From Octopus sinensis (taxonomy: Eukaryota): a stretch of 64,000 bases of DNA. The stretch's first letter is position 1. Each line of letters begins with the position of its first letter. Shown here in pieces: positions 9,806-55,220 of the stretch. The position numbers and the translations under genes are program-made. The notes below the pieces were generated by a model that made no database searches, was not told where the DNA came from, and saw only the letters and a program-made list of their open reading frames with translations. Location: positions 2,852,001-2,916,000 of the forward strand of contig NC_043017.1 in the NCBI RefSeq assembly GCF_006345805.1, in the 5' to 3' direction.

Positions 9806-10185
9806 TCTTTTACTCTTTTACTCTTTTTACTTGTTTCAGTCATTGACTGCGGCCATGCTGGAGCACCGCCTTTAATCGAGCAACTCAACCCCGGGACTTA
9901 CTCTTTGTAAGCCCAGTACTTATTATATCGGTCTCTTGTGCCGAACCGCTAATTAACGGGGACATTGTCAAGCAATGCTGTGGGGACAAACACAGACACA
10001 CAAACATATACATATACATATATACGACGGGCTTCTTTCAGTTTCCGCCAACAAAATCCACTTACAAGGCTTTGGTCGGCCCGAGGCTATAGTAGAAGAC
10101 ACTTGCCCAAGGTGCCACGCAGTGGGACTGAACCCGGAACCATGTGGTTGGCAAACAAGCTACTTACCACACAGCCACTCCTGCA

Positions 10186-10187
<2 letters not shown>
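9803..10187 (-). mobile_element. SINE family A, near full length
   Basis: Head at the 10187 end, internal CA/TA stretch, and a (TACTCTTT)n tail at 9803. Confidence 0.9.
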
Positions 10188-10227
<40 letters not shown>

Positions 10228-11399
10228 AGATATATATATATATATATAGTTATACATACATATATACATTCATACATACATGTATGTGTGTATTTAGTGT
10301 ATTTGTGTTTGTGCCCGTGTGCATTTGTATGTGTGTGCGTAAGTAGTCGAGACAAATGCGACATTGCCTCACATCCCTCCTTATTAGATTAATTTCTGAA
10401 AATCATAGAATTAGGGAACCGGTAAGTAATTGTAACTAAACGTTCTGAAAAGCAGCCAAGTTTGTTCTCCACTTCTATTTTCGGGAAAGATGAAATCTCC
10501 CCATTGCTGTCCTTAGACAATTTCTTTCTTTTGGTGCCAAAACAAAAGGGCCACCGTAAACTGGTTAACAGCTATAGATTAATAGACATTGATTATGGAA
10601 TATTTCGTGTTTATATGTAAGGCTATTCTTACCAAGTCACATGGAATGATATGCAGCGTATGTGTGCGCGTGCGCTCCTGTGCGTGAGTGTACCTGTCTC
10701 TATGTGTGTACATGTTTGTTGTGTGTGCACGTGTGAGTAATCTTGATTTCAAATTTTGGCACAAGGCCAGCAATTTCACAGGAGATAATAGGTGATTATA
10801 TCAACCGCAGTGCGCAAACTGATACTTATTTTATCGACCCCGAAAGGCGTGTGAGTAATATTCTGATGTATTACACCGTAATTTGGTTTTTGAATTTTAA
10901 ATTACAGCACGTGGTATATACGTACTATAAATTTTCACTTATCCTCCAGAAATATTTTATCTATTCTTCTCTGTAAGAAATGCTAAACATTTAATTGATG
11001 CTCTTTTCGGAATATGACCAAATTACATCGTGACTTGCCATAAAAAAGAAATGTTTTCTTATTATTATCCAGAATGTGTAAATGCATGAGACATTTAGAA
11101 ATAAGTCCCTGGCGTTTGCACTCGCTAAATACATTTACAGTGTGTGCCATATAGATATACACAAACTGCATGGACTTATCGAGATCGCATGATGATTGAG
11201 AACTTGAAGAAGTGGATAGTTTATGGAGTTCACAGTTTTAGCTGGTGGCCTACAGAGAAAAGAAGTTGTTATCTCTACAATGAATAGGATGCATAGACAA
11301 GGATAACAGCTATAGGGAGATAATGTAATATTCCTGGTACGTAAAGCCTGCAGTGATCAAATTTGCGAAATAGTTTCTCTGGAGTTGAGAGAGAAGATG

Positions 11400-19149: not shown

Positions 19150-19460
19150 TGTATTTGCTTCAGTCATTTGACTTCGGCCATGCTGGAGCACCGGCTTTAG
19201 TCGAGCAAATCGACCCCCAAGACTTATTCTTTGTAAGACTAGTACTTATTCTATTGGTCTCCCTTGCCGAACCTCTAAGTGACGGTGGACGTAAACACAC
19301 CAGCATCGGATGTAAAGCGATGCTGGGGGCACAAACACGCACACACAAACAGATACATACGCATACACATATATATATACGACTGGCTTCTTTCAGTTTC
19401 CGTCCACCAAATCCACTGACAAGGCTTTGGTCGACCCGAGGCTATAGTAGAAGACACTTC
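19150..19460 (-). mobile_element. SINE family A, head truncated
   Basis: CAGTCATTTGACTTCGGCCATGCTGGAGCACCG...GAGGCTATAGTAGAAGACACTT. Confidence 0.85.
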
Positions 19461-40629: not shown

Positions 40630-40701
<72 letters not shown>

Positions 40702-40909
40702 GTGAAATAGAAAGATGAATAATCTTGTAGTAGATTAATCAAAAGTTTAACCGATACCTTAGTAGCAAAAATCACAGCAGTGAACAGCCGGTTGGAGGTA
40801 CAACCATCTGGCGTTGGCAACCGTTGCGTTGGTGCGGATAATTGAAATTAAAACATTATTGGTGATTGAAGAAATGGAGCTGAACGCAGATTAAACAGAA
40901 ATCGTTTTA

Positions 40910-40996
40910 TTTCATTCTACACGTGTTCGAAAGGCACAATTACCAAAATCCGATTGAATAATGGGACCATATTGTGTTCTTCTCTTCAGGAAGAAA
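40910..40996 (-). ncRNA. Hammerhead ribozyme copy with GAAA read as GAA (mutation or sequencing indel)
   Basis: Reverse complement has CTGAAGA, stem II and CACGTGTA, but reads CTTTC-GAA-CACGTG, one A short of the core. Confidence 0.55.
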
Positions 40997-41459
40997 AAGA
41001 AATCCGTTGGAAAAACAAAAACAGAACAGAGGCAGAGCAAAAACAATCGAACTGTGCTCCTAAGAGCCCATGGCGAAACTGTTTATCAGTGTATGTTGAG
41101 ACCGGTGGCTGAAGAATTCAACAGTCAGGCATCGGTCATCATGTGGTTGAGGGTGTATAGATGTTCTTTGTGACCGAGAATAAAGTTCTGACTATTTAAA
41201 GAATATTGGATGTTTTATAAGGGCGAGAAAAAATCTACTTAGAGACGTGTGGTGTGGTATACTGTTCTATATATGTGTGTGTTGGCGTAGGGGTAGAAAA
41301 CATTTTTGTGTACGTGTGTGCGTTTGATCGTTCGGCTGTCAGTGGCTACTGCCGTGATAACCGTTGGGTGGCAGAAAGAAAAAAAATAAAGAAATTATAT
41401 ATATATATTATGTTTTTTTGTGTGTGTGTGGTGTTTTCATCTAACCTGCCTTGACAAGG

Positions 41460-41785
41460 AACCCCCGCTGTGAAAAAACAAGCCCGTTTGTCTTAACAGG
41501 AGTAATTTCCCTTGCAGTGGTTAATTGTAGATATCTTAAAATCTATTTCAGAATTTGTTACAAGGGCTATGGGTGCCGGTCTTATTTATAAACGCTATTT
41601 AAAAGGCCAGATAAGTGTAACGCCGCCAATGGGGGCATCGAAAAGCCGACTGTAAGAGCCCGTTTACCATCCGGCCCTGGCAAACAAAATATGGAAGAGT
41701 TCGGAGACACAAAGGTTGCACTGTCTTCTGCCCTATCAAATGGGAGGGCCACCGACAAAATTGACATTCCAGCCTATAGCTTAAG
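41460..41785 (-). pseudogene. Putative GIY-YIG endonuclease C-terminal remnant of a Penelope-like element (mirrored on + strand at 41790-42110)
   Basis: Minus-strand frame from the apex reads SYRLECQFCRWPSHLIGQKTVQPLCLR, resembling the PLE pattern Y-x-I-x-C-x2-C...YIGxT-x-R/Q-x-L-x2-R. Downstream frames are broken (e.g. EIDFKISTINHCK). It lies upstream of the hammerhead, as expected for a PLE 3' end. Confidence 0.45.
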
Positions 41786-42576
41786 CGAACTTAAGCTATA
41801 GGCTGGAATGGTCAATTTTGTCGGTGGCCCTCCCATTTGATAGGCAGAAGACAGTGCAACCTTTGTGTCTCCGAACTCTTCCATTTTTGTTTGCCAGAGC
41901 CGGATGGTAAACGGGCTCTTACAGTCGGCTTTTCGATGCCCCCATTGGCGGCTTACACTTATCTGGCCTTTAAATAGCGTTTATAAATAGACCGGCACCT
42001 AGCCCTTGGTAACAAATTCTGAATAGATTTTAAGATATCTACAATTAACCACTGCAAGGGAAATTACTCCTGTAAGACAAACGGGGCTTGTTTTTTCACA
42101 GCGGGGGTTTCCTTGTCAAGGCAGGCTTAGATGAACACACACACACACATAAACATAATATATATATATAATTTCTTTATTTTTTTTTCTTTCTGCCACC
42201 CAACGGTTATCACGGCAGTAGCCACTGACAGCCGAACGATCAAACGCACACACGTACACAAAAAATGTTTTCTACCCCTACGCCAACACACACATATATA
42301 GAACAGTATACACACACACACGTCTCTAAGTAGATTTTTTCTCGCCCCTTATAAAACATCCATATTCTTTAAATAGTCAGAACTTTATTCTCGGTCACAA
42401 AGACATCTATACACCCTCACCCACATGATGACCGATGCCTGACCTGTTGAATTCTTCAGCCACCGGTTCTCAACATACACTGATAAACAGTTTCGCCATG
42501 GGCTCTTAGGAGCACATTTCGATTTGTTTTTTGCTCTGCCTCTGTTCTGTTTTTGTTTTTCCAACGGATTTCCTTT

Positions 42577-42664
42577 TTTCTTCCTGAAGAGAAAGACACA
42601 ATATGGTCCCATTGTCAATCGGATTTTGGTAATTTGTGCCTTTCGAAACACGTGTAGAATGAAA
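42577..42664 (+). ncRNA. Type I hammerhead ribozyme (PLE-type, minimal stem III), intact core
   Basis: Stem I TTTCTTC (42577-83) pairs with GAATGAAA (42657-64, one bulge). CTGAAGA at 42584-90. Stem II GAAAGACACAA / TTGTGCCTTTC (10 of 11 pairs). GAAA at 42645-48, palindromic CACGTG, GTA cleavage triplet ending at 42656. Confidence 0.8.
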
Positions 42665-42751
42665 TAAAACGATTTCTGTTCAATCTGCGTTCAGCTCCAT
42701 TTCTTCAATTCACCAATAATGTTTTTATATATATATATAATAAATACATAT

Positions 42752-42788
<37 letters not shown>

Positions 42789-43154
42789 ATTATATCATAT
42801 ATAATATATATTACATGTAATTGCTTGCCTATATTTATATGTATAAAGACACATTTATATATATGTGTGTGTTTCTGTTGTGTTTATATATATATGTGTG
42901 TATACACACATTCATACACACATGCTTACATACATGAGCATACACACAGAAACACACACGCACTCTCATAAGCTCTGTCTCAAACACACACATCTTCCCT
43001 TCTTGTATATAAGCTATGAACTAATGACATCGCTATTGTATTTCCACTTACGTTATCAACATCCGAAACGATGAGCGTTGACTTAAGTGTAAATCGAACT
43101 CAAATCTTAAGGCGACGTAAGAATCAAAGGCACGCCTGACACTTTGTTCTACAG

Positions 43155-47642: not shown

Positions 47643-48008
47643 CTCTCTTTTACTCTTTTGCTTGTTTCAGTCATTTGACTGTGGCCATGGTGGAGCACCG
47701 CTTTTAGACGAGGATATCGTCCCCAGGACTTATTCTTTGTAAGCCTAGTACTTATTTTACCGGTCTCTTTCATCGAACCGCTATGTTACGGGGACGTAAA
47801 CACACCAACATCATTGTCAAGCGATGGTGGAGGGACAAACACAGAGACAAAAATATACACACGCAAACATACATATACATATACGTATATACGACAGGCG
47901 TCTTTCAGTTTCCGTCTACTAAATCCACTGACAAGGCTTTGGTTGGCCGGAGGCTATAGTAGAAGACACTTGCCCAAGGAGCCACGCAGTGGGACTGAAC
48001 CCGGAACC
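47643..48008 (-). mobile_element. SINE family A
   Basis: Matches 9803-10187. Confidence 0.9.
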
Positions 48009-48364
48009 ATACCTACGTAAAAATACACACACAAACATTGAGACAAATTTGCTATGGAAGAGCTCATGATTTCATTCTTCCATTCAGCGTCCGTCGACGC
48101 AGATACGTATCTCGAGGCCCTACACAACGGCAAGATTCTGGATGTCGCTCTCAACCTGTCGTCCGATCGTACTTGAAATCCGTTGCACCGCAGCCTCTGT
48201 CCTCCAGCATGCTCTGTCCATATTAATTCACATCAAATTTGCGGGCGACCCCAGCGAAGTGAAACATTCAAGGTTCGTTTTAGATAAATGAATAGACTTA
48301 ATTAGAGATATTGAGTACACACTTATACACACATAATCACCCATGCTCATACATAGAGGTATGC

Positions 48365-49599: not shown

Positions 49600-49885
49600 C
49601 AATCACTTTTTTTGCAGCCAGATCGTTCTACACAATTTCTCACAAGCCTTTGTGTTTTTTTTCCACTTATTCTTTCAGAAGTCATTCGTTGACTCTTACT
49701 ACCTGGTTCTCTTTCTCTGATTCACTTCGTCCATCCTCTTCTCCTTGGCAGATTTGACTCTCAAGGGTCACGAAGGACCATGAGCTTGTCCCACGAAGCA
49801 CTAGTCCAAGCAAAGTTGTTTTTTGTAAACCAGAATGTCGTCCATGAGTACCAGCCTCCGTATCCACACCACTGATGTTATCCAT
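49600..49885 (-). mobile_element. RTE-type LINE 3' end remnant
   Basis: HSGLQKTTLLGLV...GEEDGRSE.KE resembles the RTE motif R.SGLAKTILQGTV.G.RRRGRQ.KRW. Confidence 0.45.
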
Positions 49886-49886
49886 A

Positions 49887-50330
49887 GCCGCAGGAGTGTC
49901 TGTGTTTTAAGTAGCTTGCTTACCAACCAATGATCCGGGTTCAGTTCCACTGCGTGGCAACTTGAGCGAGTGTCTTCTACTATAGCCTCAGGCTTACCAA
50001 AGCCTTGTGAGTGGATTTGGTAGACAGAAAATGAAAGGAAGCCCTTCGTATATGTATATATATATATATATTATAATATATATATATATTATATATATAT
50101 ATATATATGTATGTATGTGTGTGTGTATATGTTTGTGTGTCTGTGTTTGTCCCTCAACATCGCCTGACAACCGATGCTAGTGTATTTACATCCCTGTAAC
50201 TTAGCGGTCCGGCAAAGGGACCATAGAATATGTACTAGGCTTACAAAGAATAAGTCATGTGGTCGATTTGCTCGACTAAAGGCGGTGCTCCAGCATGGCC
50301 GCAATCAAACGACTGAAACAAATAAAAGAT
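49887..50330 (+). mobile_element. SINE family A, full length with expanded internal (TA)n
   Basis: Head GCCGCAGGAGTGTCTGTG at 49887, TA expansion at ~50055-50110, 3' half to 50330. Confidence 0.9.
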
Positions 50331-51848
50331 TATAGGATAGGCAAAGGCTGATACTGCTTGGCACCAGTGACTTCGCAACACATTTCTACAGTTGAGTGAA
50401 GCGCAGCAACGTGAAATAAAGGGACTTGTTTAAAAACATGAGAGTCATCCCGGTCCGGGAATCGAACTTACCGTCTCATGATTGAGAGCCCAACGCTCTA
50501 ACCACTGACCCATGCGCCTTCACTGGTACAGCAACAAGTGTAACTTTCCGAGCGATACACTTGAGGGACGTTGAATGCTTGGTTTCATGACATTAAGGAA
50601 ACCTAAAGAAATTTGCTTTCATAGATTTAAACATCAACCGATGTTAAATAATTATCTCTAATCTTCTAAAATATTGTCTCATACACTTCTTCTCCCTGAC
50701 ACATTCATTGACTGAAACTTGCATAGGATCTGTACAGAATTTCAATCTTTTAATCTTTTAATCCGCGCATTGAGCATGTAACACTGAACTGCAGTTATAT
50801 CTTTAATACCTGGTGTTTAACAAACAGTCTGTAAATCAAGTGTATGATGCAGAATAAAAAGATTTGCCGAATGTCATTTTCGCATGTAGTCAGCCTCATT
50901 TGTGTTTAAATTCTGGGTTAGTTAGGACCCTTCAAACAGCTTGACATTGTAATCGAACCGGTCAGTTTCATTGTTATTCAATAATTTAATAATTCATATA
51001 TCGGTAACCGTGTTCAAATTGTGATAAACGTCTTTTACAAATAATTAACAATCTATTATACTTAACTAAGTCATAAGACGGCGAATTGGCGGAATCGTTA
51101 GCAGCATTTCGCCCGTTGCTACGTTCTGAGTTCAAATTCTGCCGAGGTCGACATTCGGGAGCCGAATGCCCTAACCACTAAGCCACGCGCCTTCAGTTTC
51201 TGTCTTACAATATCCACTCACAAATCTTTGGTCTGCCTGTTGCTATAGCAATAGATAGATACCCAAGGTTGGGAGGCAAGATTCATAGCACACAACCACA
51301 CCGCCAGAGAGAGAGAGAGAGAGAGAGAGAGGGTGGAGAGAGAGAGAAAGGAGGAGAGAGAGAAAGGGGAAAAGAGAGACAGATGTCACAGCGACTTGAT
51401 AAGTACTGACAAAAGATTACCCTGTGAATATTCGTTCTTTTAAACATAGCAGCCAAATGTTCCTCAAGTCACATCACCCTTTACACTTTTCAGAAACGAA
51501 GGTGCAATATACACAAGACAGGAAGAATAGATGGCGCTTGAATGCATTTGTCTATTTTTGATATATATATATGTTCGATATGGATTGTCCTGTATTTCGT
51601 TACAAGGCCATAACGTACCTGGAATTCAACTTCTGCAAATCATTTTACCTGGGAACCCATTACCTTTTAGCTACCTCATCTTCATATATGGAAAATAAAT
51701 AAAGACTTCTTCTAATCATAAGGAACATTCAGAAAGAAAGTAAGCCTATTATATTTACAATTCGCAAGGCCTCAACGAAACACACTACGTACAACACTAA
51801 CAGCGAGTTAATGAGAAGGATAATTATGAGAGAAAAAACACTACATAT

Positions 51849-51882
<34 letters not shown>

Positions 51883-51940
51883 ACATTATTGGTGAATTGA
51901 AGAAATGGAGCTGAACGCAGATTGAACAGAAATCGTTTTA

Positions 51941-52027
51941 TTTCATTCTACACGTGTTTCGAAAGGCACAAATTACCAAAATCCGATTGAATAATGGGAC
52001 CATATTGTGTCTTCTCTTCAGGAAGAA
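51941..52027 (-). ncRNA. Type I hammerhead ribozyme, intact core
   Basis: Reverse complement reads TTTCTTC-CTGAAGA-GAAGACACAA...TTGTGCCTTTC-GAAA-CACGTG-TA-GAATGAAA. Confidence 0.75.
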
Positions 52028-52057
52028 AATAGGAAATCCGTTCCAACGGATTTCCTA

Positions 52058-52146
52058 TTTTCTTCTGAAGAGAAAGACACAATATGGTCCCATTATTCAA
52101 TCGGATTTTGGTAATTTGTGCCCTTTCGAAACACTGTAGAATGAAA
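52058..52146 (+). ncRNA. Hammerhead ribozyme copy with damaged stem III (CACTG instead of CACGTG)
   Basis: CTGAAGA at 52065-71, stem II, GAAA at 52128-31, then CACTGTAGAATGAAA. Confidence 0.55.
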
Positions 52147-52359
52147 TAAAACGATTTCTGTTCAATCTGCGTTCAGCTCCATTTCTTCAAGTCACCAATA
52201 ATGTTTTAATTTCAATTATCCGCACCAACGCACGGTTGCAACACCATATGGTTGTACCTCCAACCGTGCTGTTTACTGCTGTGATTTTTGCTACTAAGGT
52301 ATCGGTTAAACTTTTGATTAATCTACTACAAGATTATTCATCTTTCTATTTCACATAAT

Positions 52360-52391
<32 letters not shown>

Positions 52392-52697
52392 GTATGTATG
52401 TATGTATGTATATATAAAGAAAGAAAAGTAGCATGCTTATTAAAATTATAAACGACTGAAAAGAGTCAGTGGTAACGGAAAGGTACGCTATTTTCCTTTT
52501 CGTTTGAAAGAAATAATTATTATGAAAAAGCAACCGGAAATCACCCAAATAGATGACTTCTCAAGAAATGGAATTTAAAGAAATTTACACAGCAAAACAA
52601 AAAAAAAACGAACATACGAAATTAAAAAGGAGGTGGCGGGAAGGGGGTAGAGAAAATTCAAGCAAAAGATGAAAACTAGAATCTACCGCATATTGTG

Positions 52698-54554: not shown

Positions 54555-54592
54555 GCTATGTAGGTATATGTTTATCATCTCTCTCTCCTCTC

Positions 54593-54671
<79 letters not shown>

Positions 54672-55220
54672 AGCAGAGAGAGAGGAGAGAGAGAGAGAAG
54701 AGAGAAAGAGGTATAAATAGAAATATATAGATATAAAGAGCGAGAGGGAGAGAGACAGGGAGAGAGAAAAAGAGAGAAAAGTGGGAAGTTATCAGAAGAC
54801 ATTGAAGTAAAAATAAATAAAAATAACATAAAAGCAAAATAAAATAAAAATGATAAATAAAATATTTAAAGATTAAAAGACATGTGGAGAGTTGCGTAAC
54901 ACGAATAACGGAAGTATTGTTCTGCAAGCGTGTTTCCTTATTGCAGTAATAGACTTCCAAAAATATCTAATTAAGTCTTTGTAACTCTATCTAAATCCGA
55001 GAAATTCGAAATCGCTTCTGCAACGAACGACTGCGGAGACACGATTCTTTGCCAGTCAGCATTCTGTCAAGGTTCTCCATTTTGAAATATGACGTAAAAT
55101 GTAAGACGATCTTCTTCTGGCTTTTCAACATGTTGGATGTCAGCGTTCGAGCTGCTGATTTACCTAATTATTGCCTTAAAATAACTGGCTGAGTATTCCA
55201 CACAACCTGAAAGTTTAAGA
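54190..55220 (-). mobile_element. Possible highly decayed mariner transposase split by microsatellites
   Basis: Minus-strand LDRMLTGKES resembles (F)LxRIVTGDExW, and ILFQQENTH resembles LxQQDNAxPH, in the right order. Confidence 0.35.

What the first reader, a model, noticed from the sequence alone, without database searches (positions are those of the whole stretch)
51882..52355. Second, independent fold-back copy with a different apex but identical end geometry
Seen: the same sequence family in the opposite orientation, folded at a different point (52043-44, just upstream of the ribozyme) and with unrelated flanks beyond the TA tracts. The long arm again ends TGTGAAATAG-TA-repeat, and the short arm again stops at ...AACATTATT next to (TA)n. 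Inference: a variable apex (variable 5' truncation) plus fixed ends is what target-primed reverse transcription followed by snap-back second-strand synthesis predicts. A random read chimera is unlikely to reproduce the same asymmetry twice.
Basis: partly seen in the sequence, partly recalled or inferred. Interest (0 to 1): 0.8.

Follow-up and report, generated by a model that had tools for sequence, protein, structure and literature searches.

The report
Penelope-like retroelement fold-back insertion in (TA)n
The fold-back is real, and it is the known insertion scar of a hammerhead-ribozyme-carrying, Penelope-like retroelement that lands in TA repeats: a head-to-head inverted copy with an extra "tail" on one arm, so it is a new family member rather than a new mechanism.

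Summary
Window 51882-52355 is a head-to-head fold-back with its apex at 52043/44. The short arm is 51882-52043 and the long arm is 52044-52355. It belongs to the same family as a larger fold-back at 40701-42724. Both sit inside (TA)n tracts and have unrelated flanks.

Both long arms end ...CTATTTCACA-TAA(TA)n. Both short arms stop about 150 nt short of that end, within 2 nt of each other (AAAACATT versus AACATT).

The strand that ends in CTATTTCACA carries a type I hammerhead motif with a complete catalytic core. It has a short helix III capped by a palindromic ACGU loop and a long helix II. It scores below Rfam's threshold (14.9 bits against 34).

[quoted passage not shown] - a hammerhead ribozyme
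- 5' truncation
- an inverted 5'-truncated partner
- an extension on one arm only

PLE junction palindromes were attributed to self-priming in 2013. The one-sided tail was traced to two RT start sites in 2024.

Neither copy has an ORF or a pseudo-LTR, so these are non-autonomous or truncated copies. The tail is about 150 nt rather than the usual 30-40.

Verdict: a real feature, a new member of a known kind, of modest interest.

The parts
51846..51881 (.). Left (TA)n tract abutting the short arm of copy 2; presumed target microsatellite
   Evidence: Sequence read. Perfect (TA)>=6 tracts cover 4.2% of the window.
51882..52043 (-). Short arm of copy 2. The element's sense strand is the minus strand here. 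The outer end starts at AACATTATT and lacks the last ~150 nt of the element.
   Evidence: Inverted repeat I1; four-arm alignment; blastn.
51941..52029 (-). Hammerhead type I motif in the short arm, with intact CUGAAGAG...CGAAAC-ACGU-GUA core
52043..52044 (.). Apex (head-to-head junction). The 2-nt centre CC is templated, being the continuation of the long arm.
   Evidence: (ATCCGTTCCAACGGATT); comparison with the longer copy 1.
52044..52355 (+). Long arm of copy 2: the 3'-terminal 312 nt of the element, ending CTATTTCACA
52058..52146 (+). Hammerhead type I motif in the long arm. The core is intact. Helix III reads ACACTGTAG instead of ACACGTGTAG, which may be an assembly indel. The predicted cleavage site is GUA|G at 52138/52139.
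   Evidence: coordinates read.
52206..52355 (+). One-sided ~150-nt 'tail', present only on the long arm. It begins with UUAAUUUCAAUUAU followed by an AC-rich stretch, CCGCACCAACGCA.
52356..52400 (.). TAA(TA)n tract abutting the 3' end of copy 2
40630..40700 (.). (TA)n tract abutting the 3' end of the copy 1 long arm
40701..41790 (-). Long arm of copy 1: 1090 nt with no ORF. The tail is 40701-40849. The hammerhead motif is at 40910-40997 (-), where the core reads GAA for GAAA.
41791..42724 (+). Short arm of copy 1. Its outer end is ...CCAATAATGTTTT next to (TA)n. It contains the best-preserved hammerhead motif, at 42576-42664 (+).
42725..42800 (.). (TA)n-rich tract abutting the short arm of copy 1

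Best explanation
Both loci are insertions of one young, non-coding retroelement family. The family carries a hammerhead ribozyme and is mobilised by a Penelope-like element (PLE), most likely a (TA)n-targeting clade such as Hydra.

Shown:
- The element has a fixed 3' end (CTATTTCACA, then TAA(TA)n) and a variable 5' truncation point.
- Each insertion is a head-to-head pair of copies joined at that truncation point with only a 2-4 nt centre.
- One arm lacks the terminal ~150 nt.
- Both ends lie in (TA)n.
- The sense strand carries a type I hammerhead motif about 70 nt upstream of the short-arm end and about 220 nt upstream of the long-arm end.

Inferred mechanism:
1. The PLE endonuclease cuts a TA repeat.
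2. [quoted passage not shown]
3. At the end of the 5'-truncated template the RT turns round onto cDNA. It either self-primes or jumps to a cDNA primed from the other target strand.
4. The outer end of the second arm is fixed by a second, internal RT start or annealing site about 150 nt upstream.

On this reading the ~150 nt is this family's version of the PLE 'tail'.
For: Structure.

Hammerhead:
- All conserved core positions are present: C3-A9, G10.1/C11.1, G12-A14, A15.1/U16.1, H17 = A.
- Helix II has 10 pairs, and helix I has 8 positions with one mismatch.
- Helix III has 2 pairs, capped by a palindromic ACGU loop.
- A short helix III with a palindromic loop is reported for metazoan type I hammerheads generally, and an enlarged helix II for PLE hammerheads (PMC4209133).

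Target:
- All four ends lie in (TA)n, although TA tracts cover only 4.2% of the window.
- Hydra-clade PLEs insert into (TA)n, have canonical hammerheads and occur in molluscs among others. Naiads also use (TA)n (PMC8557442).

Architecture:
- In one example the inverted pLTR is 37 bp shorter than the direct ones, and junction palindromes are read as self-priming (PMC3846280).

Biochemistry (PMC11167929):
- PAc protein extends both target strands.
- RT starts at two internal RNA sites, and the tail is the sequence between them.
- In PAc the start sites lie about 85-92 nt past the hammerhead cut. Here the internal site lies 67 nt past it.

Independence of the two events: unrelated flanks. The short-arm ends agree within 2 nt although the tail holds other AT-rich patches.
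Against: - No RT or GIY-YIG coding sequence is present. There is no ORF, no Pfam hit and no protein homologue. PLE identity therefore rests on architecture and the ribozyme motif alone.
- Neither locus has a pseudo-LTR or partial tandem.
- The tail is about 150 nt, against the published 30-40 nt.
- The hammerhead match is far below Rfam's gathering score (14.9 against 34). It depends on accepting a ~50-nt helix II, and cleavage is untested.
- Two of the four motif copies carry a defect.
- There are only two insertions, and no further copies could be retrieved.
- The 1090 nt of non-coding sequence in copy 1 is long for the 3' part of a Hydra element, which is under 3 kb overall.
Confidence: 0.68

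Rival explanations
1. This is the first reader's version: pure snap-back. A single target-primed cDNA folds back on itself, and second-strand synthesis copies it. The short arm ends where the product was captured by microhomology with the TA repeat.
For: The centres are tiny: 2 nt and 4 nt. Self-priming was proposed for Penelope junction palindromes. The short-arm boundary lies at a U/A-rich patch, UUUUAAUU, that could anneal to (TA)n.
Against: Snap-back should copy back to the cDNA's 5' end. The tail holds other AT-rich patches, such as UUGAUUAAUCU and AAGAUUAUUC, yet both events stop within 2 nt of each other. A 2-nt loop is too tight for an intramolecular hairpin. This account is a sub-variant of the best explanation rather than a different element type.
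Confidence: 0.25
2. It is a SINE-like partner of a microsatellite-specific non-LTR (LINE) element, for example an R4/Dong-type element that targets TA-rich repeats. The inverted arm would come from twin priming.
For: The 3' end is fixed, the 5' end is truncated, and the 3' junction reads TAA(TA)n. Dong-R4 LINEs are listed among the most active LINEs in Octopus vulgaris (PMC13282606), but the host of this window is unidentified.
Against: From general knowledge of L1 inversions, twin priming joins an inverted upstream segment to a non-overlapping downstream segment. Here the arms cover the same sequence. Hammerhead motifs are linked with PLEs and retrozymes; by my own recollection LINEs instead carry HDV-like ribozymes. 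There is no poly(A) and no recognisable LINE tail.
Confidence: 0.08
3. It is an assembly or long-read artefact, such as fold-back chimeric reads or a mis-polished palindrome.
For: Differences between the arms are mostly 1-nt indels: 30 gap events against 9 substitutions. Nearly all are private to one arm. This suggests residual long-read error. PLE inverted structures are also known to trouble assemblies.
Against: Both palindromes are short and bounded on both sides by unique, non-palindromic flanks. Two unrelated loci show the same asymmetric ends within 2 nt. Chimeric reads would fold at random points and run to the read end.
Confidence: 0.05
4. It is a fold-back DNA transposon or MITE with a TA target duplication, or a DNA-level palindromic duplication at a fragile (TA)n site.
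For: The arms are long inverted repeats and the flanks are TA.
Against: The outer termini are not inverted repeats of each other, because 150 nt is unique to one arm. The internal content differs by truncation at the centre, which is the opposite of internal deletion between conserved termini. The hammerhead motif and the fixed 3' end point to an RNA intermediate.
Confidence: 0.04

Closest known systems
Hydra-clade Penelope-like elements (Craig et al. 2021, PMC8557442)
   Same: Both insert into (TA)n and have a hammerhead motif. Both show 5' truncation, a head-to-head inverted 5'-truncated partner and an extension on one end only. The clade is reported in aquatic invertebrates including molluscs.
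   Different: These copies have no RT/GIY-YIG ORF and no pseudo-LTR. The tail is ~150 nt instead of 30-40. Helix II of the hammerhead is unusually long (~50 nt). Sequence relatedness to any Hydra family was not testable here.
Poseidon PAc of Anolis carolinensis (Frangieh et al. 2024, PMC11167929)
   Same: In both, two discrete ends lie downstream of a hammerhead, and the tail is the interval between them. PAc cuts an AT-rich target and extends both target strands, which offers a route to head-to-head copies.
   Different: PAc start sites are 30-40 nt apart and not homologous to the target. Here they are ~150 nt apart and both lie next to U/A-rich sequence that could pair with (TA)n. No biochemistry was done for this family.
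Penelope families of Adineta vaga (Arkhipova et al. 2013, PMC3846280)
   Same: Both have an inverted terminal repeat shorter than its partner, an optional 31-bp tail, and palindromes at the head-to-head junction that are interpreted as self-priming. The cis-acting terminal sequences are sufficient for mobilisation in trans.
   Different: The A. vaga elements have ORFs, direct pLTRs and target-site duplications of 8-10 bp. None of these can be seen here.
Metazoan non-LTR retrozymes (Cervera and de la Pena 2020, PMC7229834; Li et al. 2026 preprint)
   Same: Both are non-coding sequences with a type I hammerhead and are regarded as non-autonomous derivatives of PLEs.
   Different: Retrozymes are head-to-tail tandem arrays of 150-450 bp monomers. 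Here there is no tandem array, one hammerhead per arm, and the arms are inverted.

Membership tests
Penelope-like elements (EN+) | Single ORF with PLE-type reverse transcriptase and GIY-YIG endonuclease | tested here: not met
   There is no ORF longer than 80 codons in any frame of the 1090-nt arm, no Pfam hit and no homologue. The copies are non-coding. An autonomous partner could not be looked for.
Penelope-like elements (EN+) | Hammerhead ribozyme motif in the terminal repeat or UTR | tested here: met
   The core is complete, with helices I-III, on the sense strand in all four arms. It is intact in two arms. The match is at motif level only, and cleavage was not tested.
Penelope-like elements (EN+) | Frequent 5' truncation with an inverted 5'-truncated copy adjacent at the 5' end (head-to-head) | tested here: met
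   There are two loci with apices at different element positions and centres of 2-4 nt.
Penelope-like elements (EN+) | Optional tail extension present at only one end of the insertion | tested here: met
   One arm is longer by 149-150 nt in both loci. The length is about 4-5 times the published 30-40 bp.
Penelope-like elements (EN+) | Pseudo-LTRs from partial tandem copies | tested here: not met
   There are no direct repeats within or next to either locus.
Hydra / Naiad clades of PLEs | Insertion into (TA)n microsatellites | tested here: met
   All four outer ends abut (TA)n, whereas TA tracts make up 4.2% of the window.
Rfam RF00163 Hammerhead_1 | Score at or above the gathering threshold (34 bits) | tested here: not met
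   There was no hit at gathering or at E<=10 on 2.2 kb. The score was 14.9 bits, E 0.57, on 161 nt. The penalty comes from a 50-nt insertion in helix II.
Metazoan non-LTR retrozymes | Head-to-tail tandem repeats of 150-450 bp monomers, each with a hammerhead | tested here: not met
   No tandem arrangement is present.
Metazoan non-LTR retrozymes | Expression as self-cleaved linear and circular RNA | not testable with these tools
   No transcript data are available.
LINE twin-priming inversions | Inverted 5' segment derived from a different, upstream part of the template than the direct 3' segment | tested here: not met
   The arms cover the same sequence and form a true palindrome.
Fold-back / MITE DNA transposons | Terminal inverted repeats at both outer ends with a target-site duplication | tested here: not met
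   The outer 150 nt of the long arm has no counterpart on the other end. A duplication cannot be seen inside (TA)n.

The most novel reading that the evidence does not exclude
This may be a young, (TA)n-specific, non-autonomous Penelope-like family. Its insertions would record two reverse-transcription start sites about 150 nt apart, several times the length of any described PLE tail, each next to U/A-rich RNA that can pair with the TA target. If the family is abundant in the source genome, a census of apex positions and arm ends could decide in vivo between self-priming and priming from both target strands. That would settle how PLEs build their inverted repeats.
Probability: 0.3. Interest if true: 0.5.

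Novelty: new member of a known kind. Interest (0 to 1): 0.3.

Why it matters
How Penelope-like elements integrate is still only partly understood. The first in vitro system dates from 2024 and leaves second-strand steps and the origin of inverted copies open. A young, short, non-coding family with clean junctions in a simple target is a convenient natural data set for that question. It also reminds annotators that such palindromes are real insertions, not assembly errors. The architecture itself has been described repeatedly since the mid-2000s, so these two loci add an example, not a principle.

Tried and rejected
Searches for more copies all came back empty:
- Exact 20-mer and gapped hammerhead patterns found nothing in metagenome contigs, genome contigs or viral contigs.
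- Element ORFs are not on record.
- Translations have no homologues.

Coding capacity: six-frame translation and Pfam found nothing. A CxxC...CxH pattern near the copy 1 apex looked like a Hydra endonuclease tail but has no homologue, so I dropped it.

Other RNA checks:
- No tRNA-like SINE head.
- No HDV-like or other ribozyme at E<=10. The miRNA hits are artefacts of the palindrome and of microsatellites.
- The short-spacer hammerhead core pattern (N4-30) has no hit inside the element.
- The tail RNA fold is not clearly better than shuffles (z = -0.59 and -2.47).

Other structural checks:
- Other fold-backs in the window are all microsatellite palindromes.
- No internal direct repeats or pLTR.
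- Helitron ends (TC...CTRR) were rejected by inspection.

Host identification was not pursued. The resemblance of the abundant SINE to an octopus repeat is from memory only.

Full report
**What is there**

The region 51882-52355 is a near-perfect fold-back.
- The repeat finder gives arms 51879-52042 and 52045-52208: 164 nt, 90% complementary without gaps, 2 nt apart.
- A gapped alignment of the arms shows 158 matches, 1 substitution and 4 single-base gaps.
- The right arm continues for another ~150 nt to 52355, where it ends CTATTTCACA followed by TAA(TA)n. The left arm starts at AACATTATT directly after a (TA)n tract.

The same family occurs once more, at 40701-42724, in the opposite orientation.
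- The long arm is 40701-41790, the centre is near 41790 (...GCTTAAG-CGAA-CTTAAGC...), and the short arm is 41791-42724.
- Both long arms share the identical terminus. Both short arms stop at the same place to within 2 nt: AAAACATT in copy 1 and AACATT in copy 2.
- No other family members are in the window.
- Outside the TA tracts, the flanks of the two loci share only microsatellite and SINE-like fragments.

It is far beyond chance, and the two loci are independent.

**Strand and ribozyme**

A fixed end plus a variable inner end implies that CTATTTCACA is the 3' end of an RNA-derived element. That strand carries a type I hammerhead motif:

UUUUCUUC-CUGAAGAG-[helix II, ~50 nt]-CGAAAC-ACGU-GUA|GAAUGAAA

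- Every conserved core nucleotide is present.
- RNAfold recovers a 10-pair helix II on its own.
- Helix I has eight positions with one mismatch.
- Helix III has two pairs, capped by a palindromic ACGU loop.

Coordinates including helix I are 42576-42664 (+), 52058-52146 (+), 51941-52029 (-) and 40910-40997 (-).

Rfam finds nothing at its gathering threshold, nor at E<=10 on 2.2 kb. On 161 nt it aligns Hammerhead_1 end to end at 14.9 bits, E 0.57. The low score comes from the 50-nt insertion in helix II.

The box pattern CTGANGAG-N35-65-CGAAAC occurs three times in the window, all in this family, against zero in 100 shuffles. The fourth arm misses the pattern because its core reads GAA for GAAA.

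Cervera and de la Pena 2014 describe a short helix III with a palindromic loop for metazoan type I hammerheads, and an enlarged helix II for PLE hammerheads.

Activity is untested.

**No coding capacity**

- The 1090-nt arm of copy 1 has no open frame above 80 codons.
- Its translations hit no Pfam family and no protein in the large database.
- There is no tRNA-like head and no internal direct repeat.
- The window as a whole is non-coding eukaryotic DNA, rich in microsatellites and in one SINE-like repeat.

**Comparison with the literature**

- Craig et al. 2021 list the standard features of Penelope-like elements. [quoted passage not shown]
- The same paper notes a microsatellite bias. (TA)n is the target of nearly all Hydra families, which have canonical hammerheads and occur in molluscs among others. 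(TA)n is also the target of Naiads.
- Arkhipova et al. 2013 describe an inverted pLTR 37 bp shorter than its partners and a 31-bp optional tail. They argue that the palindromes at head-to-head junctions reflect self-priming.
- Frangieh et al. 2024 showed in vitro that a PLE protein cleaves and extends both target strands. They also showed that reverse transcription starts at two discrete sites inside the RNA, downstream of the hammerhead, and that the tail is the interval between them.
- Non-autonomous PLE derivatives are documented: Chlamys MRC1 and animal retrozymes.

**Interpretation**

The two loci match the PLE insertion architecture feature by feature: TA-repeat target, hammerhead, fixed 3' end, scattered 5' truncation, head-to-head partner and one-sided extension. 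I conclude that they are insertions of a non-autonomous (or deeply truncated) PLE-mobilised family.

The long arm is the cDNA primed at the RNA 3' end. The outer end of the short arm marks a second start or annealing site about 150 nt upstream. That site lies 67 nt past the predicted hammerhead cut, compared with roughly 85-92 nt in PAc by the numbers.

The small centres (2 and 4 nt) mean that the two arms end at the same template position. Two routes would give this:
- two cDNAs copied from one RNA and joined by a template jump at its 5' end.

Two loci cannot separate these routes. Simple snap-back alone does not explain why both short arms stop within 2 nt of each other, because the tail offers other AT-rich patches.

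**Departures from the textbook picture**

- There is no ORF and no pLTR.
- The tail is about 150 nt.
- Both start sites lie next to U/A-rich RNA that could pair with the target. In PAc the start site is not homologous to the target.
- Copy 1 contains an internal ACATAA(TA)6 (sense strand, 41396-41413) that repeats the 3' junction motif. Its inner 380 nt may come from read-through of an upstream unit.

**Caveats**

- Differences between arms are dominated by single-base indels: 30 gap events against 9 substitutions in copy 1. Almost all are private to one arm.
- This pattern looks like residual long-read consensus error. The hammerhead 'defects' in two arms may therefore not be real, and arm divergence cannot be used for dating.
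- An assembly artefact is nevertheless unlikely as the origin of the palindromes. They are short, they are bounded by unique flanks, and the same asymmetric ends recur at two loci.
- All attempts to obtain further copies failed. The decisive census is left for the source genome.

**Verdict**

It is explained by known Penelope-like element biology, as a new family member with a long tail. Interest is modest.

Noticed in passing
window 9841-10250 and 18 other places (e.g. 1447-1664, 19168-19459, 47675-48010, 49884-50308): An abundant SINE-like repeat at 70-88% identity, often ending next to (TA)n. Its translation (GFGRPEAIVEDTCPRCHAVGLNPEP...) recurs among the window's stop-free stretches. From memory it resembles a cephalopod SINE. 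The host was not identified.
   Followed up: partly
window 41396-41413: The internal ACATAA(TA)6 (sense strand) repeats the element's 3' junction motif ACATAA(TA)n. Copy 1 may therefore be an upstream unit (41414-41790), a short TA tract and a ~698-nt unit (40701-41398), copied from a read-through transcript.
   Followed up: partly
window 40701-42724 and 51882-52355: Arm-to-arm differences are mainly 1-nt indels: 30 gap events against 9 substitutions. Nearly all are private to one arm. This suggests uncorrected long-read consensus errors in this assembly, or mis-polishing of palindromes.
   Followed up: partly
window 54575-54715: A compound palindromic microsatellite, (CT)n-(TA)n-(GA)n, produces spurious miRNA-family matches on both strands.
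   Followed up: yes
window 1-64000: The window is very rich in microsatellites. There are 129 perfect (TA)>=6 tracts covering 4.2% of bases, plus many (CA)n, (TATG)n, (GA)n and trinucleotide runs. There is no protein-coding signal and no tRNA.
   Followed up: yes
window 52225-52270 and 40790-40835: The tail holds an AC-rich stretch, CCGCACCAACGCAACGGUUGCCAACGCC, with stem-loop potential about 18 nt downstream of the internal start site. It recalls the AC-rich stem-loop where PAc starts reverse transcription. The fold is not significantly better than shuffles in copy 1 (z = -0.59) and modestly better in copy 2 (z = -2.47).
   Followed up: partly
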